Part shown: one piece after another, positions 1 to 52,117 of the stretch | How the letters are laid out: every line of letters starts with the position of its first letter | Numbering within the stretch: the first letter of the stretch is position 1 | Assembly: GCA_037447605.1 (NCBI GenBank) | Contig: CM074809.1 | Coordinates: forward strand, 3,028,689 to 3,092,688 | From: Zygnema circumcarinatum SAG 698-1b | Lineage: Eukaryota > Plantae > Zygnematophyceae | Direction: 5' to 3' | Length of the DNA: 64,000 bases | The notes under the pieces: generated by a model | The model's input: only the letters and a program-made list of their open reading frames with translations | Database searches by the model: none | Told to the model about the DNA's origin: nothing | Translations under genes and position numbers: made by a program

Positions 1-1496
1 CCTCCTACTCCCGCTTCAAGCCCGCCATGCCCGCGAGAGGAATCCTATTGAAGGAAAATCCCACCTCCCGTTCCATTCAGACTGCAGCCTCGTCCCTTCT
101 TCCCCCTCCCTTAGCCCCTGCGCACGCTGAGCTCCCCGCCGCCATGGCTGAGCGAGCAGGCCTCCGTCTTAGGGTTGGGTGGGCCGAGGGCGAAAGAAAG
201 GAAGGGAGGAAGGAAGGCACCGCGAAGCTTCGCCCGCGGACTCTCCCTGACGGGCCGCCGCCGCCGCTGACGGCCGCTGACGGCCGGCCGCGTCACGGCT
301 GCCGGCCGGCGGCCACGTGTCGCCATCCTGACTGTCTGTATCATGCCATCCGACGGTCCATTAAAGCAGCCTCGTGGGGGCGCGTGCGTGGTCGAGGGCG
401 GACGAAGGGTGACGTCATCCACAGATTTTTATTGGGTGGGATTTCCTGCTTTCTCTTTTTTTTTTTGGGTTGGGCAGGGGAGCAGGAAACGACAAAATGT
501 CGGTGCACGAAAATTACGGCGCGCTGCGTGATCGGAGCGGATGCGGGCGGCCGGCGCGGCCCGCGGCGGCATGCTGACGTGGTGGCCTGTGCTTGGTCAT
601 AAGGGGGCGCGACTCCCGTGGAAGCGTGTCGGCGCGAAGCTTCGCATGGCCCTGGCCACCACGTGGCAGCGGCCGCCCGCTGGAGGCCCACTGGGGCGGC
701 TCTTCCGAGGACGATCGTGCGTATCCGCTGACGTATGAAACCATACTAAAAGCGTACGGCTCCAATCCGGAGGAAGACTATCGTATCTAAATGACGCCAT
801 CGATTTGACATGACTCAGCGGACTCCGCACTCGGATAGGTACGGGATTGTTACGGAAAAGTACGAAATGTACGAAATAGTACGGAGGAGATGAGACGTCA
901 GCCAGAGGGCGGCCGCGGGCTGCGGCGAAGTCCCCTTCCGGGATGCCGCCCAGCTGCAACTTCCACGTCACCAGTGACGTCACGTACGGATCCATGTTAC
1001 TGATGCTGCTTACGTAGACGCTCCTTGTTTGGCGATGTGCTGTTCAGTGCTAAATCACTGAAACTGAAGCTGGGATTGCAACTGCAACTGCAACTGCATG
1101 TGTAAGGGTCCGAGATGGGCGACATGAGAGGGACACGCATGCATACATTCCCTGCAAGCCCGCCCTCTTTATTGACGCACAGAAATGCCTGCCTGCCTGC
1201 CTGCTCTCGTCTCGCCCACTCGCTCCAAAAGCAGCCTAGACTCTACCTCTAAGCGTGCTCTGTAGCCGAAGACATACCCTCCCTCCCTCGCATTAAAGGC
1301 CGCTTGGGTTGCCCGACACTGCGAAGGCGTTCATATTAAACCAGAACATGAATACATCTCAATATCTAATCCTCAAACGAATTGAATCGGGTAGCGAAAC
1401 AACGTTGGATGCCCTCCAAGACGCGGTCGCCAGCCAGCGCCCAGAGAGGCGGCTCATGTCAGGGCACGGGACGAAGCGCCCTACTGCCCTACTGCC

Positions 1497-4400
1497 CTAG
1501 TGCCCTACTACTGCTGGGGGGGGGGCGGGGGGGCCGTGGCGGTCCTCCCATTGGCGGCGGCCCTCCGCGGCGAGGCGCAGCATCTCCTTGTACTGCCCGT
1601 TGGCGCCGTCGTAGTCGCACACCGCGACCGTGCTCATGCGCACGCGCCGCCCAAAGGCCTGCGCGCCCACCCGCCCACAGGCCCCCTTCAGTCACTCTCA
1701 CATGGCAGGGGGCGCTAGGCCTGCTGCACCCTTACCGCGCTGCAGCCTGCATGGAGGGAGGCAGAGGGAGGGAGGGAGGGAGGGAGACAGAGGGAGGGAG
1801 ACAGAGGGAGGGAGCGCTCACCTGCGCAATGCGGCTCCGTGTGAGGGCGAATACCACTTCCGTTTCGTTGGCAGCCGCCTGGTCCAGCAGACTCTGCAGA
1901 GTGGAGTCGAGCCCGCCTGCAGGGTTCCATGGCAACACACATTCAAACCGCGTCAAAACGGAACGGCAAGTTTTCGAATTGCATACGCTTCAAATCGCAT
2001 GCGGCAGCAACGGCAAGCTTCTCCTACCCATCGCGTACTCTGAGAAAAGCAGCTCTATTTCTCTCTCTTCCATGAAAGGAATGCTCTGTGTACTGCCACG
2101 TGCAGCAGCTGTCTCATGTTCTCAGCGCAATCCACGTCGACCTCACATTTCGGTCAAAAGCAGTTTCCTAATCTAGGAAGGTGGGGGGGGGTGTGGGGGT
2201 AATGGTGTAAGGAGTGGTCCTACCTTCCGCTGTGACCTCCTCTATGTTTGGCGCCACAATGATGCACTTCGCCCGCTTGCTCCGTACGGCGCGCGAAACT
2301 TCGCGAAGGCCGACAAGAAGGCGCCGCTTTTTCTTTGCCTGCACACAAAATTCAGAGAGAAAAACTCCGATGTTCAACGGAAACGTACTCCACGACGAAG
2401 GTCCACAAAGAAAATGGAAAAAGTCGAGAAGGGAAGCTTTACTTCATTGACCAGCCCAGTCTACTTGCTCTCCCTCAGACCTTGATCCGCAATGCTGAGA
2501 CTTGCAGGCACACTCAAAAGTGGGGAGGAGAGTGGGAGGGAGGGAGGGAGAGAGGGAGGGAGGGAGGGAGGGAGGGAGGGAGAGAGGGAGGGAGGGAGGG
2601 AGAGAGGGAGGAAGGGAGGGAGAGAGGGCGGGAGAGACGGCGGGAGGAAGAGTGGGAGCAGTACTTTGAGAGGGTCTCTGGCCTGCGCTCTCTCCTGAAA
2701 GCGGAGCAGCTCCTTGAGGAGTTCCACTGTGACCCGGTTCAGCTCAGTGCTGATCACCTGCTTGCAATATCTGCACGAACATAAAATTCATTGTAGTTTG
2801 CACGAAAAAACCAGAAGAAAAGCAGAATTGATACAAGGTCAACAGGTAGAATGTGCACACAGGGAGCCTCCCTCCCTACCGTATGTACACCTCGGGCCCG
2901 ATATATGTGTTGGGCTTCTTGCTTCTCGATAAATCTCCATCTTTCAAAGCTTTCCCAGCTTCTGAGGAGGAAGAGGAGAGAGTCCGCCCCGTCCCGCTGA
3001 GAGGGAGAGAGTCTCCGCAGGGCGGCTCATGGCCTCCGCCTGCAGCAGAAGCTTCTTCTGGGTGACAGGGAGCAGACTCTCCCCCTCCCTCTCCCTCTCC
3101 CTCTCCCTCTCCCTCTCCTCTCCCTCTCCCTCTCCCTCTCCCTCTCCTCTCCCTCTCCTCTCCCTCTCCTCTCCCTCTCCCTCTCCCTCTCCTCTCCCTC
3201 TCCCTCTCCCTCCTCCCTCTCCCTCTCCCTCTCCCTCTCTCTCCCTCTCCCTCTCCATCTCCAACTGCCTCTGCTTCTCTACCTCTGCTTGCGCTCTGCT
3301 TCCATGCATTGCAGCCCCTTCCAACCGTTGACTTAACTCAAGCCTCTCCATGGCTTGCTGCACTTCTTCCTGAGCGGCTGCCTCACATTCTACATGTGCA
3401 GCTTCCGACGAAAAACTTTTCCTTGAGGGTCCTTTCAACGATCTCTCTTCAGCCTCTTCGCAATCAGATGGAGGAAAACGGGTCGAAGGAGGGTCGACTG
3501 CTCCATCTGACGGAGCTGTTTTGCACAACTGCAGGGACTCTCCTTCACTGCCACTCCTGCTAGACTCTCCTCCCTTCTCATTATCTGTGTCAGAGCTACT
3601 GTTTACCCCCGCATCATCGTTGGCTGGGGGGGCTTCTGTAATGGTGTCCACTCCTGCGTTGCATTGTGTTCCGGCGTTTGCAGCTCTTTCCTTGAGAATG
3701 ACCTTTTTCAAAGCACTCAGCTTCTTCTTCTTTGGTACAAGCCGTTCTTTGCCCCTGCACACGGTGATGCAGGAAACGGACAATTGAACAACATAGGATT
3801 TTCACCGAAGGTAGTCTTTTCGATTCACTCGCATTCACTAGCATACGACTTGTGGGTTGTGTTACACTCCACGAGAGAAAGCAGTCGATGGATTTGTGGG
3901 GTTCACCTCCTTTGTATCACAGTCGACGAGGCAGGATTGACGGCTGCAGCAACAGGAGAATTTCTGCTAAGGGAGGAGGGTCCGCTTTGCTTCCACGAGC
4001 CTCCCTCCCGGTAATAAGAAGCAATAGCAGATGGAACAGCACCGCTTCGTTGGGCGGCCTGGCACAGAAAAAAAAGGATATAAATCGACTACATTTCCGT
4101 TGCACTTCCTTGCAGTGTTTGCTCGCATCAAACTTGAATAAACAAGGAATAAGGAAGATCTATCTTTTATCTTGTGTAGCAAGATATCCGTAGCCTAAAA
4201 TGTCATCAAAGCAGGAAGTGAATCAACGTCTATGGTCGTTCAACGCATGTACTGAAAAGGAAAGGCAGGCGCGGATGGGAAGGGCAGTACATTGTTCAAG
4301 TTTTGAGCGGGCAGAAGATCGCCGAGGGAGAAAGGACGACGTTTTCCCTGTCCTCTCTCCTTGACAGATGCCTCCCTCTGCGACGGATGCAAGAGGAGCA

Positions 4401-5286
4401 GCGGCTACTCTTAGGGACATTAGATGCAGGATATGAGTCATTGCATTGGAAGCTTTTTCGTAGCAATCCCCTACTTTGCACTTGCTTTCAGATGGACGAA
4501 TGTAAACTACAATGGCACTCAGAAGACAATAGGTGCAGGAGAACGACCGGCCAAAAGTAACTGAAGGTGAAATGAACTATTGATGTCAAAAGCACACCTT
4601 TGCCTCGTAAAGCCTTCGGGACTCTGAATTGTAGCCCTCATGCTTGCTGATTAGGTGGTCCTGAAGAGCTGGAAATGATTGTACGAATTTATGACAAGAG
4701 AGGCAGTGCACCTGGAAAGCAAAAGTCAAAAACCCCTTCACACATTCGTCATCGCAATATTGTTTCCACTTAACAAATATCATATCTTGCCAATCCCCTT
4801 GCCCTCATTCAGCGAAAGAAAGCGGAGCAGTGAAAAGCTTCAACAACCTTCTCCATACTAATGATGATGATGAAGGCATTACCTTTCCTTGAGCATCCAT
4901 CCGGCTATTTCTCGCTTCGAATGCAGCAAGCTCAAGAAGTTTCCTTTCAGCATTCGAGCTATTGTTTGACGGAAGGGGTGCCCGATTGGAGGAGACTGGT
5001 GCCATGTCTTCTCCAGTTGATCCACAGAGTGAAAAGCTATTCAATTCCGGAAATAAATGGGCATACTCGGTGGAAGAGGGAGATGGAACTTGAGAGGGGG
5101 GCTGCTCTCTGCGAGGAGTGTCTCGACAGCTGATCCAACCGCCACTCTGTGAGGGAGGCCTGCATGGGGAGATGCTAGGAGGGCGGTCCAAACTCTGTTC
5201 CATGTTGGGGAGGGGCCATGACAGCAGCCTCTGCAGCACCGGATGGGAGACGAAAGATCGTCAAAACGATACACAGACAAGTCCAT
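1497..5286 (-). CDS. SECISBP2: SECIS-binding protein 2 (selenocysteine insertion factor), multi-exon, with an N-terminal C2H2 zinc finger
   Basis: GT-AG exons 2665-2770, 2224-2338, 1822-1916 and 1497-1658 splice to YCKQVISTELNRVTVELLKELLRFQERAQARDPLK|AKKKRRLLVGLREVSRAVRSKRAKCIIVAPNIEEVTAEG|GLDSTLQSLLDQAAANETEVVFALTRSRIAQ|AFGRRVRMSTVAVCDYDGANGQYKEML. This is the SBP2 SID plus L7Ae RNA-binding domain. Upstream exons (ending 3907, starting 3754) give NPASSTVIQRR|GKERLVPKKKKLSALKKVILKER, the SBP2 Lys-rich motif. There is an FPEL motif in the exon ending at 4883, and the zinc-finger exon is 4598-4711. The 5' start (about 5200-5286) and the middle exons are less certain. Confidence 0.92.
2521..2650. 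repeat. (GGGA/GAGA)n purine tract in an SBP2 intron
   Basis: Direct read. A similar tract lies at 1754-1812 in the neighbouring intron. Confidence 0.9.
3075..3262. repeat. (CTCCCT/CTC)n pyrimidine tract within the SBP2 locus, probably intronic
   Basis: Direct read. It produces the spurious poly-ER/EG stretch in ORF 2944-3783. Confidence 0.85.
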
Positions 5287-6369
5287 GCCTGCACGTTTAA
5301 TGGGGCTTACTTCCCTGCTTTACTAGAAATTGCGGGCTTGCGGTATTCAAAATTAAACAGTAGGCATCATTGAGTTCAAATCATGCATCCGGTTGTTGCC
5401 CCGGCTTACCGACTCCTTCTGGCTGACTCTCCAATTTAACAAATGAATAAATGGTTGTGCTTAACGGTTTTACCAACCAACCTTCTTTCTGACGCTCTCT
5501 GCACCTGTACACTCACTGCAAGTCCCTCCGATAATCCCACTCGCATAACGTGTTTCTATCAACTTATTCAAAGTTTATAAACACAAATATTCAGTGATAA
5601 AGAGAAAATCTTAAATCATTAGAATTAGAAAGGAAGACGACCTTACATGATGGATTTAGCATATCGCCACAATTCATCGTTCTTCAGAGAGAACCCCCAT
5701 TTTATTCCTCCCTTGACTTCAGCCTACGACTTCGACTTTCACATAAAGCGTCCTCCCCCTCTCCGTACGACACCTTAACACCCTGACTTCAATCGTTCAT
5801 AAAAAGATTCAGGCGATAAGCGATTGTTCGAAGCTCAGCATTCCACGGTATTGAGGGAACAAATTCAATTAAAATTCGCAAATTGCTTTTAACTGACTAA
5901 ATTAAAAAACCTGGCCATAATTTCTTAGCTTGACGGTATTAGAGGAACTAAATAGCTTGAATGTGCTCATCGTGCCTGCCCTTGTCTCGCCCACTCTCAC
6001 TCTCACCCGCTCTATCCCTTCGCCTCCCTCTCGCCTTTTCTCCTCCCCTCACTTCTAATTCCTCAACCTACCCACCCCCTCTTCCCTCAACTTCTAATTC
6101 TACCTCTCCTTAATTCCTTGGTCACTTCCCATCCCCATCGTCCCCCTCGCGCCCTCTCGTCTTCTCGTCTTTCATCCTTAACTCTCTCTTTGATTTTCCT
6201 TCGCCTTTCCTCCCCCTGTCCTTTAATCTCCCTCTCTTTCTACCTCGCGCAGATTCTCTTTCCCTCCCTCTCACCCTACCCTTCCCTCCACTCGTCTCTC
6301 CCTGGCGCTTCTCCCTCGTCTCTTTGCCCTATTCACTCTCTCCCACTCCCTCACCGCGCCCTCACTGCC

Positions 6370-6945: not shown

Positions 6946-8964
6946 TCACTTCATACGCTGCCATCCCAATTGCTGCCAACCCATTAAAATAAATCGAGGT
7001 CCCCCAATTTCAGCCAAGAGGGAGCGACACCGCGGACGTACGTACTCGATCGCTCTCCTCTACAAGGCCAACTTAAAGAAGAACGTGCAGAAGCATGAAG
7101 TCAGGGCATGCTCGTCAGGTAGCCGTTAGTTCCACATTTCAGAAGCGCCTATGGGACGTGGCTTACCTGCTCAATTTCCTTTGGAAAGCCCCTTCCATGG
7201 ATGCGTGAGAAAGAGGCGTCGCCGTGCCATTCTCTGCCTTCTCCATACACACTGTGAGCTCTCAAGCTTTGTAAACTCTGCAGCAGTGGATGCAAAGAAG
7301 GAGCTAATGTTTAAATGCGACATTCAGCAAGTAATCTTGTAGACCTTCTAGAGGGTACAAACGAGCACTGGTCAGCTTGGCGAGGCACTGACCTGTGGAG
7401 AGGCGGGTGGAGGGTGGCTTGCCGTGAGCTGAGAGAACTTCAAAGGGGAACTTCTCCCCCGCTCCTCCGTGAACTGCCACTCGAGCACTTGCATCCTTTC
7501 AAGGGAGCGCCCTCGCACCTCCGCCTCTCCCACTCCCACAGCCGAGTGGCCGCCATGGCTCCCTGCTCTCGCTTCGTCACTCCATCGCTGCTGCCTTGCT
7601 GCCAGGAGACACTCAATTGCGAGCGCCTCCTTGCTTTGGTAGGGAGCCTCCTCCATCGCGTAGCCGGGCGAGGATGAATGCGCAGCCCCGAAACTTCTAG
7701 AGCCTTCTAGAAGCCTCTGCGCGGCCTCCTCCCAGCTTCCCGCAGCTGCGGGGGAAGGAGACGGGCAAGATGGAGGAACGTCGCCAATTGAACGAGCTGT
7801 AGATAGCGGCCAGTCGGGCTGCCAAGGGGAAGTAAACTCCCCTCTATAGCTGCGCCACGTGGCATCATCTTCTCCTCCGCCATTTTCACGCTCACCACGC
7901 CGGCCAAGCTGCAGGCGGTGTGCAAAAGGGCTTCCCATGGAGGAGCCGAGTGAAGGCTCCGAGCATCCAGGAGATGGGATCTGAATACCGCTAAAGGTAA
8001 ACTGCACGCAGAGAATAGGGACGCATGGGTTTGTGGAGAAGACAATGATCAACAATGGGAGACGTAAGCAACGCAGCGTAAAATCCGCGATATCAGAATC
8101 CGCAGTTCCGGCACATGCGAGCCTTCTCCCGTCAGTGAGAGGATAGGCGTACCCCCTCCGGTCAGTGCCAGCGGACAGAGACGATCTCGCCGTCTCTTTC
8201 CGCAAGGCGCAAGAGGCGAGCAATGCATGCGCATGGCTGCCCGGAGGAGGGCGACTCTCTAGAGATTATCCATACTGATGCCGACGCAGAAATGCCCTCA
8301 TTCCCGCCCTGCGCAGCATCCCAGCACAGAAACACTCCTTCCATGCAGCAAACCTCCGAGCTCATATAGAGCTCCTGGGAGCACAAAGGCTCCGACTCCG
8401 ACAGCCTCTGCGTGAGGGACCGCCATGGAGAGGTCAGAGGGAGAGAAGGAGGGAGGGAGGGAGGGAGGGAGAGTGTGCGAGCGCGACCTGTGGTAGGAGG
8501 TGCGCTGCCCGCGGGGGGGAGGGAGGGAGGGAGGCGTCCGCGCTCGCTGGCTGGCGGGTGGAGGACAGAAGCCGGTGCAGGTGACGAGTGGGCAGGAGCG
8601 GCCGGGGGAGGCTTATCTGGGGCGGGGGAGGCTCATCTGGGGACGGGGAACGGGCGACAGGCGGGCAGGCGCGCACTGCGGCCCGTTGCCGTCCGGGGCA
8701 GTTGGCGCCCGCGGGCGGAACGTACGGACAAGCGTACGGCTGTACGGGATGGGGACCCATGCGCACATGCATGCCATGCGGGCAGTGGCTTTGTTTGGGA
8801 AAATTGGTGACGAGGGTTTCATAGGGATTGACTTTTTCATGTTCCCGCGGAGGGTACTTTTGTGGGACTGGCTGGCTAAGCAGGTAGACAAAGTACAGAA
8901 AATATAGCGTCGGGCAAGCTAAGACTAACAAACTGACTTGGGGATAAAGATTGGAACGTGACAT
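6946..8964 (-). CDS. Hypothetical multi-exon, low-complexity protein
   Basis: Long ORF 7372-8223 ends at a CAG|GTCAGT donor. An in-phase exon near 7167-7277 (SLQSLRAHSVYGEGREWHGDASFSRIHGRGFPKEIEQ) follows, then a terminal exon ending at TGA 6946-6948. No recognisable domain; the 5' structure is uncertain. Confidence 0.3.
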
Positions 8965-11360: not shown

Positions 11361-11849
11361 GGCAGAGGCCTGAGACGATTGCACTCGAAAGGCCTTCCAA
11401 GAAAGGACTGAAGCAGTAGCAGGAATTCTCTCGGTTGTCTTGAGACCTCTCGTTTCCCTTCCCTGAGGGACGAATGCAAGGCTATTAGGGCGAAAGTACA
11501 GCACCGCCACCGCTTGAGAGGGAGCCCTGCAAAGATAAGGAGCGAAAACGCGCAGGGCAGACCCGGGAGCTGAGCCGCAGCTTGCAGCGAGCATGCTGGA
11601 CACTGCCACGCAGCGAGCGCTAAGAGCTTAATATTGCGTTCTTCCATCCTGCAGCGCATCCACATATTCCCAAAATGCCAAATTTCCATGGCGCTACACA
11701 TAACAGGCGGCGCGTCCTGCTGATGACACGTAGCGGCCGAAAGCCACGAGGGCCCTTGAGAGCCCGCCTCGTGGGAGGCCGCCATGGATACCCCCGTCCC
11801 TCCGTGCCCGCGTGGCGGCCATGCCGAACTGCTGCCCGTTACTGCCGTC

Positions 11850-11972
11850 ACGAGACGATACGACGATACGATACGTGACCACTCCCACCATTCGATACGA
11901 TACAACACGATACTCACAGTACGACGTTTATCGACAGTTCACGATACGATACGATACTATACGATACGATTC
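11850..11972. repeat. Degenerate (ACGAT)n microsatellite between divergent DHAR and LYRM9
   Basis: acgatacgatacgatactatacgatacgat and related pentamers, read directly. Confidence 0.75.
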
Positions 11973-12122
11973 CATGCGGTCGTGGACCACAGGCGAGCCG
12001 GAGCTCGCAGTTGGACGGAACTGCGCATGGAACGCGGCGGGAGGCGAGGGGAGGGGAAAGGGGACGTCGGAGGCGCTGTGCGTGCGCCACGTGGCGCGCT
12101 CTCCCGCGAGGCCTTCTCCGCC

Positions 12123-12852
12123 ATGCGCGAGGCACTGCAGCTTTACCGGCGGCTACTGCGGCTCATAAGGGAGCTGCCCAGGGACGCGCAGGTCTACTAT
12201 GGGAGCTACTTGAGGGAGAACTATGTCGCCTTCAGCGACGAGCTGGAGCCCTCCCGCGTGGAGACTCTCGTGCAGAAGGGCCGCGAACACGCGCTATGGC
12301 TGCTCAAGAAGGTGCGCCGCTGCCTTGGGGGGTGCGTTTCTTCGCATATGGTTGGGAAAGGACGACTTGTGTTGAAAAATGTGGGAGTGAGTTTCTCGTT
12401 CTTGGTGGGGTAGGGATGAAGGTGGGGGGGTTAGTGGATGGGTTGTATCATGTCGGGGGAGAAGGCATTCCAGCAATTCTTTCCCGCTTTAATGAAAAGT
12501 AGGGATGTACCTAATTCCTGGTTGCTACCAATAATATTTTTTTTGCTCCATCGCGATTACTCGCTGTAGAAGGAAACGGAGGTGTTAGAAGAAATTGTTA
12601 TGCACTCATGGATGAGTGAGTCCTTATTCTCTGTATTCCATATGGGGAATCTAGATAGCTGCATTGAATCGTCATACATTTGTTTTCATGTTCAAAAAAA
12701 ACAGACTCAATTTGACTTTGGACGGCCTTACTTTTGAAGCGATATTCGACGTTGAGTATGGGAATGGGCGTCGTGTTTCTGGTCTCGTGCAAACGCAGTA
12801 CAATGTCGACCCCGTCAAGGCGGAATGCTTGAACACGATTGGGCAGCAGTGA
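12123..12852 (+). CDS. LYRM9: LYR-motif protein, LYRM9-like, 2 exons (12123-12311, 12799-12852)
   Basis: MREALQLYRRLLRLIRELPRDAQVYYGSYLRENYVAFSDELEPSRVETLVQKGREHALWLLKK|YNVDPVKAECLNTIGQQ*. The LYR motif plus the SDE..P.R...W...KY pattern matches LYRM9. Confidence 0.8.
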
Positions 12853-16743: not shown

Positions 16744-19700
16744 TCATAAACTTCTTTTCCTGCCTTCCCTGGCAAACCCTAACATCTCCTGCCATTCACT
16801 CCCGAGCGGGCAGGGCACACCCCTCCAAAAGGGGCTCTCACGAACCAGGAACGGCCAAACTCCTCCCAACTTTTCCGCGAGACGTGACCGCCTCTCTTGA
16901 GCTTCTCCCACACCCTCACTAAGTCGGGGTATCAAGAATTCCTCCATTAAGAGCGAGTTTGCCTGTTTTCCATTAATCTCACGTAAACTTGCTAGAAGCT
17001 GCTGCAGATCCTGGGCAGTCATCTGCCAATAAGCAGATGCCTCAAAGGCCAACCCCAACTCCCCCGCAGCCAAGAGGTGCTCTGCCGCAGCACTGAGAAG
17101 GATGGAGTATGCTGCCCCCGACTTGGCTACTATACGAGCTGTTAAAGGCATCCCTGCATAAAGCCTAGTTAATGGACATCTGCTCCGTGCACGCCCTCTG
17201 ACTTGTGAGAGAGATGAATGATGAGAGTGCGGGTAAATGTCCCTAAATACTTTCCACGCTCGGGAAAGTAAGCCAGAACCTTTGCACATCTAAAACAGGT
17301 TTTTGGATCAGATTTGAGGAGCAGAACCTTCTCATGTGCAGACATGCCAGAAGCTTCAAACCAACACATTTCCGACAGGAAACAGCATGACAATGACGAC
17401 ATGCAGGCCTTACCAAAGTCAGAAAGTGGTGTCACCTGTATCCTTGGCCTCCATATTGTCAGAAGCCTTCATCTCTGCAGCAGTTAGCCGCAGCATGCTT
17501 GCAAGAACAGTGTAAGCGTCCAGACACGTGCGATGCCAAGGGTGCAGGCCTTGCCACACTCTCGAAGTTGGAGCTCTTATACTTGCCCTCTGAAGTTCGA
17601 CAAAGCTTGGTTCTCCCGAAGAGTAGCTTCCTGTCTCTCCCCCAATTTCCCCCCCTCCCTTCCCTCATGAGTCACGGGAATCATCCTTCTTCTCATCACA
17701 GATCTAGAATGTTCCGCTATTTCTACAAATGAACTGTAATCAAGAAATGCATAATTTCAGCAGAGGTCTTGGACACTCTTGGTCACCATTTCTACTGCAA
17801 TTCCTGCTGTCGCCGCTACCAGAGCATTCCTTTCCTGCAAAGCTAGGGGAGCCATCATAATTCTGGCATTGCTTTGAACGCTTCAAAATGCTATATGTAT
17901 TTAGAAGATTAGAATGAAACCCAGGGCACATTTTCTACTTTTTTCTTGTCCACTTCCCAATGGTCCATGAAGACCCTCATTCCCTGTATGCCACAACCTT
18001 TCTTAACTCCTTTCCATCACATGCTCGCTATCAAATTGAAAATGAACACCGCTCAGGAAAAAAGAATTGGCGAAACATGACGTACCCCTCACTTCCGATG
18101 TCCGAGCCTCCGAAGTTGCATGGAATCCTTCAGTCCTCCCCCCCCTAAGAGCTTGGAACAGAGCTGCCTCCAGAAGACGACAACTTTCTTGTATTTCGGA
18201 AGAAGAAGCTGCTGCTACCATTTCCACTGCCTGCGATAGGGCCGCCTCCAACGAACCAAGCCTCTCCTGCGTGCTGTCAGAATGTTTTCCGCACAGCGAG
18301 CAAATGCTTACCTTCTCGCTTTGAGTTTCTTCCGTTTCCCTAGTCACATCGTCGTCCTGCCCATAATATTACCCCCAATATCTGGTCACTCCCATGGCAG
18401 TGAGCCTGAAACCAATGCTTGCCCAAACAGATATGACCAAATGTAGGCGAAGTAGCGGATACTGATACATTCATAAGCAAGAATGTTGAGAGCATGCACC
18501 ATGAATGCGGTGTTACGTGTTAGTTATCTAGTAAAGCAAAGGAACGCTCAGGGAAGGTCGTAATGCAACCCCTGCATGCGACCTGGCCAAAAAATCTCCA
18601 TAAAGAAAACATCTTGATCTGCTCACATTGGAAACCAGCCAACCGTTGCAGGAAACAGCGGAACAGCGGCCAATAGCCGCAAGGAAATAGTCTGATGCAG
18701 CTGACTGCGGAACTTGGCAGCGCAGACAGGAGCAAGTGAAGAGATATCGGGACAATAGGGCAGTCTGACGCTGCCTCTGCAGGACAACAATATGGAATTA
18801 GCCCTTCATGGACACCTGCATATCCGAAGAAACCTGCTTTTGTCTTTCTGGCAAAAACCACGTTTGACCTCGCTTTTTCCAACTTGGCCTTTCTACGTCA
18901 TTAGTCCCGTCAAGGTCTCAAAGGCCTCGTGCTGAGATGCAACTTCATAAAAACGCCGTTCATAACTAAGTAACAAGGCATTCCATCCAAAGTCTATCAC
19001 TTAACGGCTTGCCGAGAGCTTTTACAGAAACCAGGCAATCACCTTTGGTTGCAGCAGATCAGTATATGTTATGCATATTTCTTCCCCTTCAGAAATATCC
19101 CTTAGCGTTTGCACCACAACAACAGGCCCCGGGCCGCGACTGGTCGGCCCGGCCCTTGCGTCACCTCCCTCACAAGAATGTGGCAATGTTTCCTCTCCAA
19201 CCCCCTCCCTGCGTCTCTTCCCAGTTACTCTATGACTGGCTTGATACAGTTCCTTAGCATTTGGTGGGTACATCACGTTATGCTTGATGCTTCCCCATAG
19301 CTGCAAGTTATACCCTGCTGTAACTTTATCTGGTGCGGCTTCAGTAATTGCTGAATCTTTGTTAATGCTGTCTGACAAAAACTTGCTAACATTGAAATTT
19401 GTAGGAACACCTGCAGCAGCGGCAGCCTCATGAACTGCCTGGGCTAAAACTGAAAGGATGTTCGTTTGATTACCGGTAGGAACCACTAAAGGAAATTCAA
19501 TTGAAGAGGCCTTAGCACTTCCAGACTCTTCGCTCGACCAAGAGTGTGCAGGCCCGCTCAAAGTGGTGCCACTGGATAAATCTGCAAAACAAACTCCTGA
19601 CTCGGGGAAGGTTTGGAATGTAGCTGAGCTTTCCTGCAAGTTTGATTCATTGACTCTAGCTTGCTGCGAGTTCCTGCTGGGATCCATCACAACGGCAGAT

Positions 19701-21079
19701 GACCCGAATGATCCCTGTGGATGCATTGTGCAAAACTTGTAAAATGCATTGGGACGGCAGCTGTGGTTAAGCCATGAAAAGGGTGGCGGATATATGGAGC
19801 AGCCTACTGGACTCGAGTGCCCTGATTTATGCTCGTACGCCTCCAATCCTGTACAGAGTCCTGAATCAACCGTGATAGGTAAATTACTAGTGGTTGCTTG
19901 GCATCCGCAAGTACTGAAACAAGTACTAACAGATGCCTCTCCTAGGCAGACCTCTACAGCATTCGTAAGTACATATAAGAGCGCCTCTTCAGCCCGACTT
20001 AACACATCTGCACTCTTGAGTTTTCCCGAAACTTCGGTTTCGCTCATCACGTTTGGCATCGAATTACCATGATTGTCGATTACATCAAAGTCTACGGCTG
20101 TTCTCGCAGGCCCATTACGTTGCTCCCGTTTATTATTACCCGTAAGCTGTTCCTGAATGTCGACTGAGTCAGGTTTTCCACAGTTTCCTCTAAAGCAATG
20201 TTCGTTTTTTGTGCAAGAATTTACTTCCGCATTCCCCGCCAAACCTAAACTACTGTCCTCAGCCAGCTCCGTGAACATACCCATGGTAAGTGCTGCTTGC
20301 CGAATTTCATGGGCCATGCGCTGGATGTCATCTATTGTCCGCGGTTCTCCTACTCGTTTAAAGCCATTGTCCTTTATCGAGCCATAATTACAAATCTTTT
20401 CAAATGCCAATTTGTTGCTCGCAAGTCCAAACACTCTGCATTCACGAGCATCTTCGTTTGTAACTTCTGAATCATCGTCGTTGCAGACGTTTAAATCATG
20501 ACACCAAAGCTGCTTCGAGTTGCACTCCAACTTTGTAGCGCACAGAATTAACCGCAGGCCCAATCGTAAATCTCGCAAACCTCCAAGGCTGGGAAATGTC
20601 TCTATCTGAGGATGAGCCAGTAGATGGCATTCTCCACTTGCCATATGATAAAACTTGGCAGCAGTCGCACAAGTGTAACTGCAAAATATCGCTCTCCCCT
20701 TACAAAATTTGGAACATCGCCTTAGACCTTCATTACACTCGTTTGAAAATGTAAGTGGGAGTGATGATGTGGCCAAACTAGCAGGTTCCGTTATTTCCAG
20801 CCTATCCTCCCCCTGAAGTGAAGTTCCTTGCTGTTCAGATGACGTGAAACCAGACCTGCACTCATCCGAACCAGCACAGACTTCGGCTAATCCTGATAAA
20901 CTGCGAAGGCAGACTGAGCAGTGCGACGACAAGCATGCATCATCTGGCACTGCAGCGATTGGATAAGCTTCAATGATGCGAGTGAGCGCGCTGATGTTCG
21001 CCCTTGCAAGAATATGCCGCCCTCTCGCAGCGCTTGCTACGGAGGCCAAGCTGTGATGCGCGTAACTCGCCATGAGCAT
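16744..21079 (-). CDS. SMYD/ASHR-type SET + MYND protein, SET DOMAIN GROUP 41-like
   Basis: First exon 19043-21079 has a split SET domain (GRHILAR..., HCSVC...CSYTC MYND-like, FSWLNHSCRPN, GEEICITYTDLLQP). The next exon, from 18776, reads RQTALLSRYLFTCSCLRC (post-SET). The C-terminus VWPFLVRESPFWRGVPCP resembles plant SDG41. The internal exons at 17.4-18.4 kb were only roughly placed. Confidence 0.82.
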
Positions 21080-41300: not shown

Positions 41301-44300
41301 CGGATTTATTCTTTAGCGAAGCTTAGTCGATGCAGGTTTGCTGGAACTAGTTTTCGTGCCTCTTTTCTGAAAGCGAGTTTTGGTCTGGAAGGAACGTAAT
41401 ACCAACATACGGGAAGTTTATTGTCGTCTTTTTCTGCAGCTTCCAGCAGCTCTCGCCGGGTGTCCGACTTGGGCGCGCACTCTGGACGAGGACTGTATGG
41501 TCAGAGGTCAATTCAACGAGCTCCGATTAATGAAGCCGAAGTAGCGGAAAGCGGAGGAGACATGCACAAGGGTATGATGGTCCTTCCATTCGAGCCTCTC
41601 TCTCTCTCCTTCCACAATGTCAATTACTACGTCGACATGCCGGCAGAGATGAAAGCGGAGGGAGCCCCTGAGGACCGGCTTCAGCTTCTTCGGAACGTTT
41701 CCGGAGCCTTCCGGCCGAGTGTGCTCACAGCGCTGGTCGGTGTGTCGGGAGCGGGCAAAACGACTCTTATGGATGTGCTGGCGGGCCGGAAGACGGGGGG
41801 GTACATTGAAGGCGACATTCGCGTCTCGGGGTACCCAAAAGTGCAGGACACCTTCGCCCGAATCTCTGGCTACTGCGAACAAAACGACATTCACACGCCC
41901 CAAGTCACTGTTCATGAATCGCTGCTCTATTCTTCGTGGCTTCGCCTTCCGGCGACGGTGGACAAAGAGACGAGAGAGGTGAGCCTACGAGATTCTACGA
42001 ATTTGTGCATGGACTGGAGGCAGAATGGAGCCCGTAAGCGAACCTTAGTCCGCTTTGCGGAAGTGAAGCGAGTAATTATTTGTAATCAACGTGAATCTCA
42101 AACTCCTTAAATGGTCACTTGGCTGGATACCTAGAGCCTTCTTGTTGGAAGATTGGTGTGTTCATTTTTCACAAGTTCTCCATTTTGTAAGGGATCTCCA
42201 CACTTGCTTTAGTGCCAAATAGGTCACATCAAAGGCTTGCGCCTTGAAGCTGGTTTATGGGGTTGCGTCATTTTCAGGCCTTTGTCGAAGAGGTGATGGA
42301 CCTTGTGGAGCTGGATACCCTTCGCGATGCTCTTGTGGGACTTCCCGGCGTCACCGGGCTGTCAACCGAGCAGAGGAAGCGGCTCACTATAGCTGTTGAG
42401 CTTGTCGCCAACCCTTCCATCATCTTCATGGATGAGCCGACTTCTGGTACGAACCTGCTTCAAATGCTACTCATCATTCATTGCTTGCTTTCTCTCCCAC
42501 GTTTCATTACATTTCATGAATGTCTGTGCCCATCCTGTTGTGCTCCTATTGTAGGCCTCGATGCTCGCGCGGCTGCCATTGTGATGCGAACCGTACGGAA
42601 CACTGTGGACACGGGCCGTACGGTGGTGTGCACCATCCACCAGCCCTCCATTGACATCTTTGAAGCCTTCGACGAGCTGCTCCTCATGAAGCGAGGAGGG
42701 CAGGTCATCTACATGGGACCTCTCGGAACCAACTCGCAAATCATGGTTGACTACTTTGAGGCGATCGAAGGGGTGCCCAAGATCAAGGAAGGCTACAATC
42801 CTGCCACGTGGATGCTTGAGATTTCGCATCCTGCCGCAGCCGAGAAACTCGGAGTTGACTTTGCAGAGCTCTTCACCAAATCAGAACGCTTCAGGTGAGA
42901 TTGCTATTTGAATCATGAACCGGAATGCAGTGTCAAAAATTCTGGGGGTGTTTTCCCTTGCATGGAAAGTAGGCCTGTGACTAATGGAACTGGTTACGGG
43001 GTGATTTCATGGGGCAGGCTGAATGAGGAGCTGATAGAGTCTTTGAAGGTGCCTCCTGAAGGACATGAGGACCTCCATTTCGAGTCCAAGTTCTCGACCT
43101 CTGCAACTACGCAGTTCATTGCCTGCTTGTGGAAGCGCAACCGCATGTATCTTCGTGCGCCTGACTACAATGTCGTGCGATTCTTTTTCTGCCTCACTAT
43201 CGCCCTTCTTATTGGCTCCCTGTTTTTCGGTCTTGGAACAAAGACGTCGAACCAGCAGAATGTATTCAACGTGATGGGTGCCCTCTACACGTCTGCACTC
43301 TTCCTCGGCTGGTCCAACGCTTCATCTGTGCAGCCCATTCTCGCTGTTGAACGGACTATTTTTTACCGTGAGCGAGCCGCCGGAATTTATTCGGCTCTCC
43401 CTTACGCTATGGCTCAGGGCATCATTGAAATCCCCTATGTATTCGTACAGTGCATCCTTTACTCGCTGGTCACGTACGCACTGATTCAGTTCGAATGGAC
43501 GGCGCCCAAGTTTTTTTGGTACACGTTCTTCATGTTCCTCACTCTGCTCTTCTTCACCTATTACGGTATGATGGCGATTTCGATCACGCCTAATGAGCAG
43601 CTGGCTATGGTGGTCTCGGCATTCTTCCACTCGCTTTGGAATCTTTTCTCCGGCTTCATCATCACGCGCAAGGTGAGTGGACGAGCTTTCCCTTGTCGAC
43701 GAACTTTTCCAATCTCGTGTCAGCTTAGGATTAATCCGTGATGGATTTCCTTTTCCATCGGTTACACTGGGGTTGCCCTACCCAATTCCTCGCGTCTTTC
43801 TTCCCTTCCCTGGTTTGATTCAGAAAGCAGAAGCCGTACCGGTGATGTAATCGATGTCTATATGCAGGCGGCTGGTTGTAACACTGGAACATTGCTCGTC
43901 CTGGTTTCTTTTTGGTGCGCAGGCCATCCCTCCATGGTGGAGATGGTATTATTTCATCAACCCTGTAGCGTGGACCCTCTATGGTCTGATCGCTTCGCAG
44001 GTGAGCACTGATGACGTGGCATGCATCGGCTTGGGACGACCCATGCCTCTCTCTCTGCATGTTGAACCTATATGTTGATAGCTCTTATATTTGTCTATTG
44101 CTAAAGGAATCAACTGTGCGTTGTGATGGGTTTGACCTTATGGTGCAGCTTGGTGACTACACGAATTTGATCAATCAGCCGGGGTCGACCCGACAGCAAA
44201 CAGTGAAGGCTTTTCTGAAAGATTACTTCAGCTACGAGGATAGCTTCTTGGGTGAAGTCGTCGCTATCCTCATCGCCTTCACCATCGTGTTCTTCTTCAT

Positions 44301-51258: not shown

Positions 51259-52117
51259 GGCTGCTCTCCCACCTCCGCTCCCTCCCTCTCTCTCTCCCTC
51301 CTGCCCTGCCCTGCCCTGCAGTGTCCTGCAGGACTTACAGGACGGCCTTGCGCGGCCCCGCCTTTTGAATCTCCAACTCTTGCACGGCCGGGCGGCCGGG
51401 CGGCCGGGCGGCCGGGCGGGCGTCAGGGCGGCCGAGCGCGCCCGCCGGGAGGCTTCCCAAACCTGCGCGCTTCCGCGCTTTCCCGCGTGGGGTGGACAGA
51501 GGATGATGTCAGCCCGGCGCGCCGGCCCCGGTTCTGCCGCCCCCGAGCATCATATCTGGCGTATTTTCGATAGTCATGATCCAGTCAGAGATCGCCACGT
51601 CAGAAAGGCGCTGATGTGGCAGGCTACGGTTGGTTAAATCTCTGTGGTATCCCATTGGGTCGCGATCCTCATTCGCGGCATGGGCGGGGCTGCACCCATG
51701 ACGTCAGCGTCCTTGCGGCGCCTGCCGCCCGAGCCTGCCACGTGGCGCTCTCTCTGTGGCTGGGACTTGACAGCCTCGGACCAAGCGAGAGCCGTCCGAT
51801 TGTGATGGCTGGTTTGGATCGACGGCTCGTAGCTGGCCGGAGGCAGCCCGACTGCGAGCTAGCCGTTTCCCCAGCCCTACAGGCCGTACAGTATCTGTGC
51901 AGTGCTGGTGCCCTTCGGCGGCGGCGGACGGCCCAGGCACATGTCGCTGTTGGGGAACCAGTTCCAGTTGTTTTCGCGCGTAAGAAACATGTGAATAGAA
52001 CGGCTGTTCCTCAAAGCAGGAACGGTGGTAGAGGCATGGATCCGCCGTTAGGGTACGGAAGGAGGACTTTCGGTTTTGTGAAGGGCGTGCTGTGCCTTGG
52101 GAAGGGCTGGGCCGGCC

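What the first reader, a model, noticed from the sequence alone, without database searches (positions are those of the whole stretch)
1497..5286. A true SBP2 gene in a plant-lineage genome: selenocysteine recoding retained in a streptophyte alga
Seen: the SBP2-specific Lys-rich motif, the SID (YCKQVI...LLRFQER...DP) and the L7Ae domain in the correct order, with canonical splice sites and no disruption in the domain exons. Established: SBP2 is required for UGA-to-Sec recoding, and land plants lack selenoproteins and this machinery. The neighbours (NdhM, SDG41-like, R2R3-MYB, PDR) are streptophyte-type genes. Inference: this organism still makes selenoproteins and is informative for dating the loss in the plant lineage.
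Basis: partly seen in the sequence, partly recalled or inferred. Interest (0 to 1): 0.8.

Follow-up and report, generated by a model that had tools for sequence, protein, structure and literature searches.

The report
SBP2 gene of a streptophyte alga
This is a real, expressed gene for SBP2, the protein that lets ribosomes read UGA as selenocysteine, in a green alga close to land plants; it is a correct catch, but such algae are already known to keep this machinery.

Summary
Confirmed. A minus-strand, multi-exon gene ending at the TAG at 1497-1499 encodes a SECIS-binding protein 2 (SBP2). Spliced transcript contigs from three runs in two studies support nine introns.

- **Family:** single exons match human SBP2 residues 518-606, 632-666 and 667-702 in order. 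They match SBP2 better than ribosomal L7Ae proteins.
- **Relatives:** the closest named one is Spirogloea muscicola, then Klebsormidium, Chara and Chlorokybus. Vertebrate SECISBP2 and SECISBP2L follow.

- The ATG at 5286 lies in an intron. The first ATG in the supported exons is at 5203, and upstream 5' exons exist.
- The stretch called "SID" is the N-terminal extension of the RNA-binding domain. The Lys-rich motif is the SID core.
- The 875-nt Lys-rich "exon" is out of frame as assembled. A GT..AG intron at 3077-3282, which removes a GA microsatellite, most likely restores the frame. This is inferred, not seen.

Not new in kind: Liang et al. 2019 (PMC6627142) report full Sec machinery, SBP2 included, in all streptophyte algal lineages. 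Elsewhere in this genome the scan has noted selenoprotein genes, eEFSec and SepSecS; I did not check those notes.

Small extra: green-lineage SBP2s share a C2H2 zinc finger that I found in no paper.

The parts
1150..1496 (-). 3' UTR, about 350 nt
   Evidence: Transcript contigs X7 (1150-1657) and X1 (1186-1556). The end point is approximate.
1497..1658 (-). Last coding exon: AFGRRVRMSTVAV...AVVGH, then TAG at 1497-1499. C-terminal end of the L7Ae module plus the tail.
   Evidence: X10 contig 6. tblastn to Spirogloea P0002 residues 570-626, E=1e-16.
1822..1916 (-). Exon carrying the GLD...VVFALTR part of the L7Ae module. It holds the Arg equivalent to human R731.
   Evidence: Joint 1916/2224; alignment A5; tblastn.
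2224..2338 (-). Exon with the L7Ae core start: AKKKRRLLVGLREV...APNIEE. It holds the equivalents of human G676, E679 and E699.
   Evidence: Pfam PF01248, E=1.7e-7; human SBP2 667-702; invariant R, G, R, E, P, N, E columns in A4; joints.
2665..2770 (-). Exon with the SBP2-specific N-terminal extension of the RNA-binding domain: YCKQVI...LLRFQER...DPLK (the FRDY and RFQDR motifs).
   Evidence: Its only PDB hit is human SBP2 632-666. 21 hits in 1.84 billion proteins. Alignment A6. Joints 2338/2665 and 2770/2880.
2880..3076 (-). Exon E7b, ending in ...SRSKKPNTYIGPEVYIR. The 5' border is inferred.
   Evidence: Contigs cover 2880-3071. The KPNTYIGP motif is conserved in homologues, in frame 0.
3077..3282 (-). 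Inferred 206-nt GT..AG intron, phase 0/0, made almost entirely of a GA-rich microsatellite. Removing it restores the reading frame.
   Evidence: Frame analysis. The 3' contigs of X1 and X7 carry exactly 35 letters beyond 3071, which is 5 letters to 3076 plus 30 (k-1) letters. The 5' contigs stop 1, 4 and 16 nt past 3283, although 31-mers stay unique as far as 3183 and 3117. The joint itself was not shown, because this stretch was masked as a repeat.
3283..3754 (-). Exon E7a: the K-rich/SID core (GKERLVPKKKKLSALKKVILKER) followed by a poorly conserved acidic and Ser-rich linker.
   Evidence: Contigs cover 3280-3753 and joint 3754/3907. Human SBP2 518-606. Alignment A2.
3907..4058 (-). Exon ending in ...NPASSTVIQR. 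Joined to the next exon, this gives the conserved NPN..S...RRGKE lead-in to the K-rich motif.
   Evidence: Joints; comparison with P0001, P0002 and P0024.
4291..4377 (-). Exon with ...KRRPFSLGDLL..., the probable counterpart of the QLDL motif of the SID.
   Evidence: Joints. The alignment is weak but collinear (A3).
4598..4711 (-). Exon encoding a C2H2 zinc finger: C-x2-C-x12-H-x4-H, then G-x-N-S.
   Evidence: Joints. tblastn to P0001, P0023, P0002 and P0024, E=1e-7 to 2e-10. Invariant C, C, H, H in A1. Only weak Pfam zinc-finger hits.
4883..5230 (-). Exon holding the first ATG found in supported exons (5203-5201, MEQSLDRPP...). It ends in ...EARNSRMDAQGK, which leads into the finger.
   Evidence: Contigs and joints; translation.
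5647..6025 (-). Alternative non-coding 5' exon of a minor isoform. The 5' end is approximate.
   Evidence: Joint 5230/5647 in X7 and X10. X1 contig 5 ends at 5647 and has 125 further letters beyond 5900. A stop lies in the main frame four codons before the junction.
7167..7277 (-). 5' exon 2 of the major isoform. It is open in the main frame but has no ATG. The 5' border is inferred from an AG.
   Evidence: The loose end of X1, X7 and X10 at 5234 matches 7171-7200 exactly, and GT follows at 7166-7165. Translation.
7393..7656 (-). Possible 5' exon 1, with in-frame ATGs at 7656 and 7494. Tentative.
   Evidence: Open frame and a CAG|GT donor at 7393|7392. No transcript evidence was seen for this part.

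Best explanation
The locus is the alga's orthologue of SECIS-binding protein 2.

**Shown.** It is a transcribed and spliced gene of at least 11 coding exons. The protein is about 606 aa from the ATG at 5203, and up to about 740 aa if upstream exons are coding. In order it carries:
- a variable N-terminus;
- a C2H2 zinc finger;
- a QLDL-like motif;
- the K-rich SID core of the I/VILKE type;
- a low-complexity linker;
- the FRDY/RFQDR extension;
- an L7Ae K-turn-binding module that keeps the residues equivalent to human G676, E679, E699 and R731.

**Inferred from what is established for rat and human SBP2.**
- The L7Ae module and the K-rich region bind the kink-turn of SECIS hairpins in the 3' UTRs of the alga's selenoprotein mRNAs, and also bind the 60S subunit.
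- The SID and the RFQDR region then allow eEFSec with Sec-tRNA(Sec) to decode in-frame UGA as selenocysteine.
- The conserved zinc finger is a green-lineage addition of unknown role. My guess is an extra RNA or ribosome contact, or a regulatory one.
For: **Exon structure and expression**
- Nine GT..AG joints appear in spliced contigs of runs X1, X7 and X10, from two studies.

**Family membership**
- Pfam L7Ae on exon 2224-2338.
- Three exons match human SBP2 at 518-606, 632-666 and 667-702, in order.
- For the L7Ae exon SBP2 outranks eL8, 29.1 against 21.6 bits.
- The exon 2665-2769 search of 1.84 billion proteins returned 21 hits. Seven of the eight I fetched are SBP2-type proteins; the eighth is a truncated fragment or chimaera with the same motif.
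- Named relatives are Spirogloea, Chlorokybus, Chara and Klebsormidium, then Varanus and Crotalus SECISBP2 and fish SECISBP2L.
- Spirogloea P0002 has human SBP2 as its sole PDB hit, E=7e-39.
- tblastn and per-exon alignments are collinear with all homologues.
- The invariant columns include the RNA-binding residues.
- The K-rich motif fits the published consensus (PMC2673426, PMC2746813).

**Context**
- The literature reports full Sec machinery in all streptophyte algal lineages.
- Earlier scan notes list selenoprotein genes with SECIS elements, eEFSec and SepSecS in this genome. I did not check them.
Against: - As assembled, the 2880-3754 stretch is not one open frame. Intactness depends on an intron at 3077-3282 that I infer from where contigs end, not from a displayed joint. 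Its acceptor is a poor GAG| with no pyrimidine tract.
- The start codon and N-terminus are unresolved.
- No biochemical evidence exists.
- tRNA-Sec, PSTK and SPS2 of this genome were not seen by me. The window itself has no tRNA and no Rfam hit.
- A search for this organism's own protein fragments across the junction found nothing.
Confidence: 0.88

Rival explanations
1. A decaying or broken SBP2 gene. The GA microsatellite is exonic, the frame is really shifted, and translation stops at the TGA at 2944-2946. The product would carry the finger and SID core but no RNA-binding domain.
For: The assembled sequence needs a frame change between 3337 and 2947. The putative intron has a weak acceptor and is purine-only. 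No joint was listed for it.
Against: - The downstream exons are 83-89% identical to Spirogloea in the two best-conserved ones (58-74% in the last two), have no stops and have exact splice phases.
- Frame 0 has no ATG that could start the domain separately.
- Contig ends on both sides fit a splice at 3283|3076 and do not fit a collinear mRNA.
- The gene is well expressed.
- Earlier notes report expressed selenoprotein genes in this genome.
Confidence: 0.07
2. An SBP2-family protein kept for a role other than Sec insertion, for example general mRNA or ribosome binding like that proposed for vertebrate SECISBP2L. Sec recoding itself would be absent or independent of it.
For: SBP2 relatives with roles beyond Sec insertion are discussed for SECISBP2L (papers listed). 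The rest of the machinery was not checked by me.
Against: - All SBP2 motifs tied to SECIS binding and Sec incorporation are conserved.
- Non-vertebrates have a single SECIS-binding protein, and it does the SBP2 job (PMC2746813).
- Scan notes report UGA-containing selenoprotein genes with SECIS elements, eEFSec and SepSecS in the same genome.
Confidence: 0.04
3. A generic L7Ae-family protein (eL8, eL30, SNU13 or NHP2 type) that only resembles SBP2.
For: The only Pfam domain found is PF01248. Ribosomal L7a chains appear as weaker PDB hits.
Against: - Exon 2665-2770 matches nothing in the PDB except SBP2.
- The K-rich/SID core is present.
- Architecture and length fit SBP2 and not the small L7Ae proteins.
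- The relatives are SECISBP2 and SECISBP2L.
Confidence: 0.01

Closest known systems
Spirogloea muscicola SBP2 homologues (eukprot SM000158S02040 = P0002; SM000070S21284 = P0022)
   Same: Same architecture: C2H2 finger, NPN..RRGKE lead-in, K-rich core, KPNTYIGP, YC.QVI..RFQER and the L7Ae module. Identity is 83% and 89% in the two best exons.
   Different: The N-terminus and the linker between the K-rich core and KPNTYIGP are unrelated in sequence and differ in length. These homologues have no GA microsatellite.
Klebsormidium nitens KFL_000530420, Chara braunii CBR_g23730 and Chlorokybus Chrsp23S03678
   Same: Streptophyte-algal SBP2 orthologues with the same C-terminal half. Klebsormidium also has the zinc finger, and UniRef labels it 'C2H2-type domain-containing protein'.
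   Different: Identity in the domain exons is 52-71% (58-71% in the two best-conserved). The Chara and Chlorokybus models lack the finger region, perhaps because the models are incomplete.
Human SECISBP2 (PDB 7ZJW/7ZJX chain B) and vertebrate SECISBP2L
   Same: K-rich/SID core with I/VILKE, the FRDY and RFQ(D/E)R motifs, and the L7Ae module with G676, E679, E699 and R731. About 47-51% identity in these exons.
   Different: Vertebrate proteins have a roughly 400-aa N-terminal extension with LSAD, PFVQ and other motifs and no C2H2 finger. The algal protein is about equally distant from SBP2 and SBP2L, so it predates that split (PMC2746813).
Drosophila SBP2
   Same: A single SECIS-binding protein with a K-rich domain and an L7Ae module.
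   Different: The fly protein is 313 aa and has SVRVY in place of IILKE, which restricts it to form 2 SECIS (PMC2673426). The alga has VILKE, the type that also allows binding of form 1 SECIS.
Ribosomal eL8 (L7a), eL30 and SNU13/15.5K
   Same: They share the L7Ae K-turn-binding fold (Pfam PF01248).
   Different: They have no K-rich/SID core and no RFQDR extension. Their scores against the L7Ae exon are lower, and they do not match exon 2665-2770 at all.

Membership tests
SBP2 (SECIS-binding protein 2 family) | L7Ae/K-turn-binding module with the residues needed for SECIS binding (human G676, E679, E699, R731) | tested here: met
   Pfam PF01248, E=1.7e-7. Alignment to human SBP2 667-702. G, R, E, P, N and E are invariant in A4. 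FALTR with the Arg is in A5. Residue roles come from PMC1874613.
SBP2 (SECIS-binding protein 2 family) | SBP2-specific extension N-terminal of the L7Ae core, with the FRDY and RFQDR motifs | tested here: met
   The motifs IRYC...RFQER are present. The only PDB hit is human SBP2 632-666. Seven of the eight proteins fetched from the hits in 1.84 billion are SBP2-type. Alignment A6. Motifs as defined in PMC2746813.
SBP2 (SECIS-binding protein 2 family) | SID core / K-rich domain: KGKxxRxxPKxKKxTxLKxxI/VxxxR | tested here: met
   RGKERLVPKKKKLSALKKVILKER. It matches human SBP2 from residue 518. Alignment A2. Consensus from PMC2673426.
SBP2 (SECIS-binding protein 2 family) | QLDL motif in the N-terminal part of the SID | tested here: inconclusive
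   FSLGDLL in exon 4291-4377 aligns with vertebrate LDLGNML and algal SLGNII / VLGDLV (A3). There is no significant score. The motif is also absent from some bona fide SBP2s (PMC2746813).
SBP2 (SECIS-binding protein 2 family) | Motifs collinear in one protein, and reciprocal best similarity to SBP2 rather than to other L7Ae proteins | tested here: met
   tblastn and per-exon alignments. Named relatives are SECISBP2 and SECISBP2L. The Spirogloea orthologue's only PDB hit is SBP2, E=7e-39.
SBP2 (SECIS-binding protein 2 family) | Uninterrupted reading frame through all the domains | tested here: inconclusive
   A frame change is needed inside 2880-3754. It is resolved if 3077-3282 is an intron, which contig end points support, but no joint was displayed. 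The protein search across the junction came back blank.
SBP2 (SECIS-binding protein 2 family) | Binds SECIS RNA and supports UGA-to-Sec recoding | not testable with these tools
   This needs EMSA, in vitro translation, 75Se labelling or a knock-out.
SBP2 (SECIS-binding protein 2 family) | Co-occurs with tRNA-Sec, eEFSec, SepSecS, PSTK, SPS2 and selenoprotein genes in the same genome | not tested
   Only this 64-kb window could be read, and it has no tRNA and no Rfam hit. Earlier scan notes list eEFSec, SepSecS and several selenoprotein genes with SECIS elements. I did not verify them.
Generic L7Ae proteins (eL8, eL30, SNU13, NHP2) | A small protein that is essentially the L7Ae module, and that matches its own family best | tested here: not met
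   The protein is 606 aa or more and has SBP2-only segments. eL8 scores lower than SBP2. Exon 2665-2770 gives no L7Ae-family hit.
Vertebrate SECISBP2L subtype | SBP2L-specific motifs (QTDF, DSGY, SEIS, TPVS, PISE, RIES) | not tested
   Per-exon scores against SBP2 (P0030) and SBP2L (P0033) are about equal. The SBP2/SBP2L split occurred within animals (PMC2746813), so the subtype question does not apply to an alga.

The most novel reading that the evidence does not exclude
Green-lineage (Viridiplantae) SBP2 proteins carry a conserved single C2H2 zinc finger, C-x2-C-x12-H-x4-H followed by G-x-N-S and preceded by EA(R)KS..D..GK. It lies upstream of the SID and is absent from animal SBP2 and SBP2L. 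It could be a lineage-specific RNA- or ribosome-binding or regulatory module of the selenocysteine recoding machinery. I found no paper that describes it.
Probability: 0.5. Interest if true: 0.4.

Novelty: new member of a known kind. Interest (0 to 1): 0.25.

Why it matters
**What it confirms.** At the genome level, and with expression evidence, a streptophyte alga close to land plants keeps the central trans-acting factor of eukaryotic selenocysteine insertion. This supports the many selenoprotein gene calls this scan has made in the same genome. Those UGA codons should therefore not be annotated as stops.

**What it does not change.** The loss of Sec in the embryophyte ancestor, with the machinery retained in all streptophyte algal lineages, was published in 2019 (PMC6627142).

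**Modest added value**
- A corrected gene model, including a microsatellite-only intron that automatic annotation would probably get wrong.
- A possible gap filled: if earlier notes are right that this genome is Closterium-like, the 1KP Closterium lunula transcriptome showed no Sec machinery at all.
- A zinc finger conserved in green-lineage SBP2s.

Tried and rejected
- **Wrong frame.** One search used the wrong frame for exon 1822-1916 and its hits are meaningless. The correct frame and exons 1500-1658 and 4291-4377 gave no significant PDB hit on their own. They are too short or too diverged, and they were placed later by tblastn and alignments.
- **Nothing else in the window.** There is no tRNA and no Rfam family, so the window holds no tRNA-Sec and no SECIS.
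- **Frame break.** I considered in turn:
  - an exonic microsatellite with an assembly indel;
  - a donor at 3266|3265;
  - reading the TGA at 2944 as Sec, which is rejected because the next exon would then be out of frame;
  - an acceptor at 2963|2961, which is rejected because contigs run through it.
  
  The best fit is an intron at 3077-3282.
- **Search across the junction.** A search for this organism's own protein fragments found nothing. A blank here says nothing either way.
- **Naming the organism.** A search with the neighbouring F-box/RCC1 gene was not decisive. The best hit was 47% identical and unnamed, and a Closterium sp. Naga37s-1 paralogue reached only 33%. So 'Closterium-like' rests on earlier notes, not on my data.
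- **No relative of this window's organism.** No protein that this window encodes appeared there, and no Closterium SBP2 either.
- **Literature.** Searches for a zinc finger in SBP2 and for Closterium selenoproteins found nothing relevant.
Full report
**What is there.** The gene lies on the minus strand. ORF listing and reading of the sequence showed SBP2-like peptide blocks separated by introns. I laid contigs of four public runs on 900-5900. Three of them (X1, X7, X10; one organism label; two studies) hold spliced contigs. The fourth laid nothing.

The contigs give GT..AG joints that define these exons, in plus-strand coordinates:
- 1497-1658
- 1822-1916
- 2224-2338
- 2665-2770
- 2880 onwards, and up to 3754
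- 3907-4058
- 4291-4377
- 4598-4711
- 4883-5230

The 1658/1822 joint is not in the joint table. It follows from X10 contig 6, which has exactly 95 letters between its 900-1657 and 2223-2337 pieces. Low-depth contigs also cover introns, which means pre-mRNA or a little DNA. The gene is therefore transcribed and spliced.

- Exon 2224-2338 hits Pfam L7Ae (E=1.7e-7). Its best PDB match is human SBP2 667-702 at 29.1 bits, ahead of eL8 at 21.6 bits.
- Exon 2665-2770 has one PDB match only, human SBP2 632-666 (E=2e-5). That is the segment immediately before the previous match.
- The 5' part of the next exon matches human SBP2 518-606.
- An exhaustive search of 1.84 billion representative proteins with the 35-aa exon returned 21 hits, best E=1e-9. 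Seven of the eight I fetched have the motif followed directly by an L7Ae module. The eighth (P0008) carries the motif at its truncated C-terminal end after an unrelated N-terminal part.
- Using one of those hits as query (P0002, Spirogloea muscicola), the family contains Spirogloea, Chlorokybus, Chara, Klebsormidium, Prasinoderma and Symbiochloris. It then reaches reptile SECISBP2 and fish SECISBP2L.
- P0002's only PDB hit is human SBP2, E=7e-39.
- tblastn of five homologues against the window and per-exon Smith-Waterman scores are collinear throughout.

The literature gives the defining features, in human numbering:
- SID at 408-545, with core K517-R543;
- RBD at 623-784;
- motifs QLDL 449-452, FRDY 629-632 and RFQDR 654-658 (PMC2746813);
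- the K-rich consensus, and the IILKE element that allows binding of form 1 SECIS (PMC2673426);
- E699 and the Arg near 730 as base-contacting residues (PMC1874613).

The alga has RGKERLVPKKKKLSALKKVILKER (A2) and IRYC...RFQER (A6). It also has the invariant G, R, E...P, N, E and FALTR positions (A4 and A5). The QLDL counterpart (FSLGDLL) is only weakly alignable. The generic-L7Ae alternative is therefore rejected.

1. Labels. The Lys-rich motif is itself the SID core.

2. Start codon. The ATG at 5286 lies inside an intron and in the wrong frame.
   - Exon 4883-5230 is joined either to a minor 5' exon ending at 5647 (X7, X10) or, in the main form, to an exon ending at 7167.
   - The evidence for 7167 is that the loose end of all three runs matches 7171-7200 exactly, with GT following.
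   - The first ATG in the supported exons is at 5203 (MEQSLDRPP).
   - The main frame stays open through 7167-7277 and a putative exon ending at 7393, which has ATGs at 7494 and 7656.
   - The protein is therefore 606 aa, or up to about 740 aa.
   - The N-terminus is not conserved in relatives, so homology cannot settle this.

3. Frame. Transcripts enter 2880-3754 from both sides, but the K-rich 5' part and the KPNTYIGP 3' part are in different frames. Homologues confirm both frames. The frame of the 3' part has no ATG. The stretch between them is a GA-only microsatellite, open in all three frames.

**The likely solution is an intron at 3077-3282.** It is 206 nt, GT..AG, phase 0/0, and its length leaves remainder 2 on division by 3, as the frame change requires. 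The read-laying tool masked 3072-3279 as a repeat, so no joint could be listed. The contig ends still speak:
- The 3' contigs of X1 and X7 both carry exactly 35 letters beyond 3071. That is 5 letters to reach 3076 plus 30 letters, which is k-1 for 31-mer assemblies and is what a junction-spanning path gives.
- A collinear mRNA should instead have run on to about 3117, where 31-mers first repeat.
- The 5' contigs, at depths of 68-179, stop 1, 4 and 16 nt past 3283, although 31-mers stay unique down to 3183.

I put this intron at about 0.8. The points against it are a GAG| acceptor and the lack of any pyrimidine tract. However, another confirmed acceptor in this gene, upstream of 1658, is also G-rich. 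If the intron is wrong, an indel in the assembled microsatellite is the next most likely explanation. A true frameshift is the least likely, given 83-89% identity of the two best-conserved downstream exons to Spirogloea. My attempt to find this organism's own protein fragments across the junction came back blank.

**How it most likely works.** This part is inferred from the biochemistry of rat and human SBP2, not shown here. The L7Ae module and the K-rich region bind the SECIS kink-turn in 3' UTRs of selenoprotein mRNAs and bind the 60S subunit. The SID and the RFQDR region then enable eEFSec with Sec-tRNA(Sec) to decode UGA as Sec. The VILKE version of the K-rich element is the type that in human SBP2 permits binding of both SECIS forms.

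**Context and novelty.**
- Relatives rank Spirogloea (Zygnematophyceae) first, then other streptophyte algae, then chlorophytes, then animals. So the "streptophyte alga" reading is supported.
- Earlier notes of this scan call the genome Closterium-like. I could not confirm that.
- The same notes report expressed SelT, SelK, SelH, SelU, GPX and TR genes with SECIS elements, plus first-reader notes on eEFSec and SepSecS. I did not check them, but they argue against an orphan SBP2.
- The scan has no other SBP2 finding on other DNA.
- Liang et al. 2019 (PMC6627142) already report complete Sec machinery in all streptophyte algal lineages. They count 27 SBP2 hits in 40 zygnematophyte transcriptomes and place the loss in the embryophyte ancestor.
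- Green-algal SBP2 had already been noted in 2009 (PMC2746813).
- Their supplement lists zero Sec machinery for the Closterium lunula transcriptome. If this genome is a Closterium, the gene fills that gap.
- Overall this is a new member of a known kind. It is a sound catch of low to moderate interest.

**Extra observation.** Exon 4598-4711 encodes a C2H2 zinc finger. Its Cys and His residues and a following G-x-N-S are invariant in Spirogloea, two unnamed zygnematophyte-like transcripts, Klebsormidium, Prasinoderma and three other green-algal proteins (A1; tblastn E down to 2e-10). Vertebrate SBP2 and SBP2L lack it. I found no paper that mentions it. Other lineages carry different accessory domains on their SBP2 (PAM2, RRM, a second zf-met finger).

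Noticed in passing
window 4598-4711 (-); P0001, P0002, P0006 and P0022-P0027: A single C2H2 zinc finger (C-x2-C-x12-H-x4-H, then G-x-N-S) is conserved upstream of the SID in green-lineage SBP2 proteins. It is absent from vertebrate SBP2 and SBP2L. No paper on it was found.
   Followed up: partly
proteins P0037, P0038, P0044, P0046, P0026 and P0027: SBP2 homologues of other lineages carry different accessory domains according to precomputed Pfam: PAM2 (PF07145), RRM (PF00076), and a second zf-met finger (PF12874). The N-terminal half of SBP2 looks like a swappable adaptor region.
   Followed up: no
window 1748-1817, 2523-2638 and 3077-3282: Three introns of this one gene each hold a GGGAGR-type microsatellite. 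Two read as CT-rich on the transcript. The third reads as GA-rich and seems to make up almost the whole intron.
   Followed up: partly
window 5201-5230 and 7167-7277 (-): The 5' leader has upstream ATGs out of frame. One at 5219 opens a 14-codon ORF that overlaps the ATG at 5203. One in exon 7167-7277 opens a frame that runs to the TGA at 5041. These are possible uORF control of SBP2 translation. There are two alternative 5' exons.
   Followed up: no
window 900-1657 and below (+ orientation contig of X10): One 2224-nt contig continues 1148 letters beyond position 900, past the SBP2 3' UTR. The downstream neighbour may be transcribed into or across the SBP2 3' end.
   Followed up: no
window 52097-53992 (+): A long single ORF encodes an F-box plus RCC1-repeat protein. 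Its best database relative is only 47% identical (unnamed transcript), and a Closterium sp. Naga37s-1 protein is 33% identical over part of it.
   Followed up: partly
window 11784-12410 (+), 19025-21079 (-), 42908-43738 (+), 58524-60601 (+): Neighbouring ORFs hit Pfam families: LYR (Complex1_LYR), SET domain, ABC-2 membrane domain (ABCG/PDR type) and glycosyl hydrolase 31. I did not check NdhM or MYB.
   Followed up: partly
PMC6627142, supplementary file 5: The 1KP transcriptome of Closterium lunula is listed with zero hits for eEFSec, PSTK, SBP2, SecS and SPS and no Sec proteins, while many other zygnematophytes have them. This is probably a false negative of a transcriptome.
   Followed up: no
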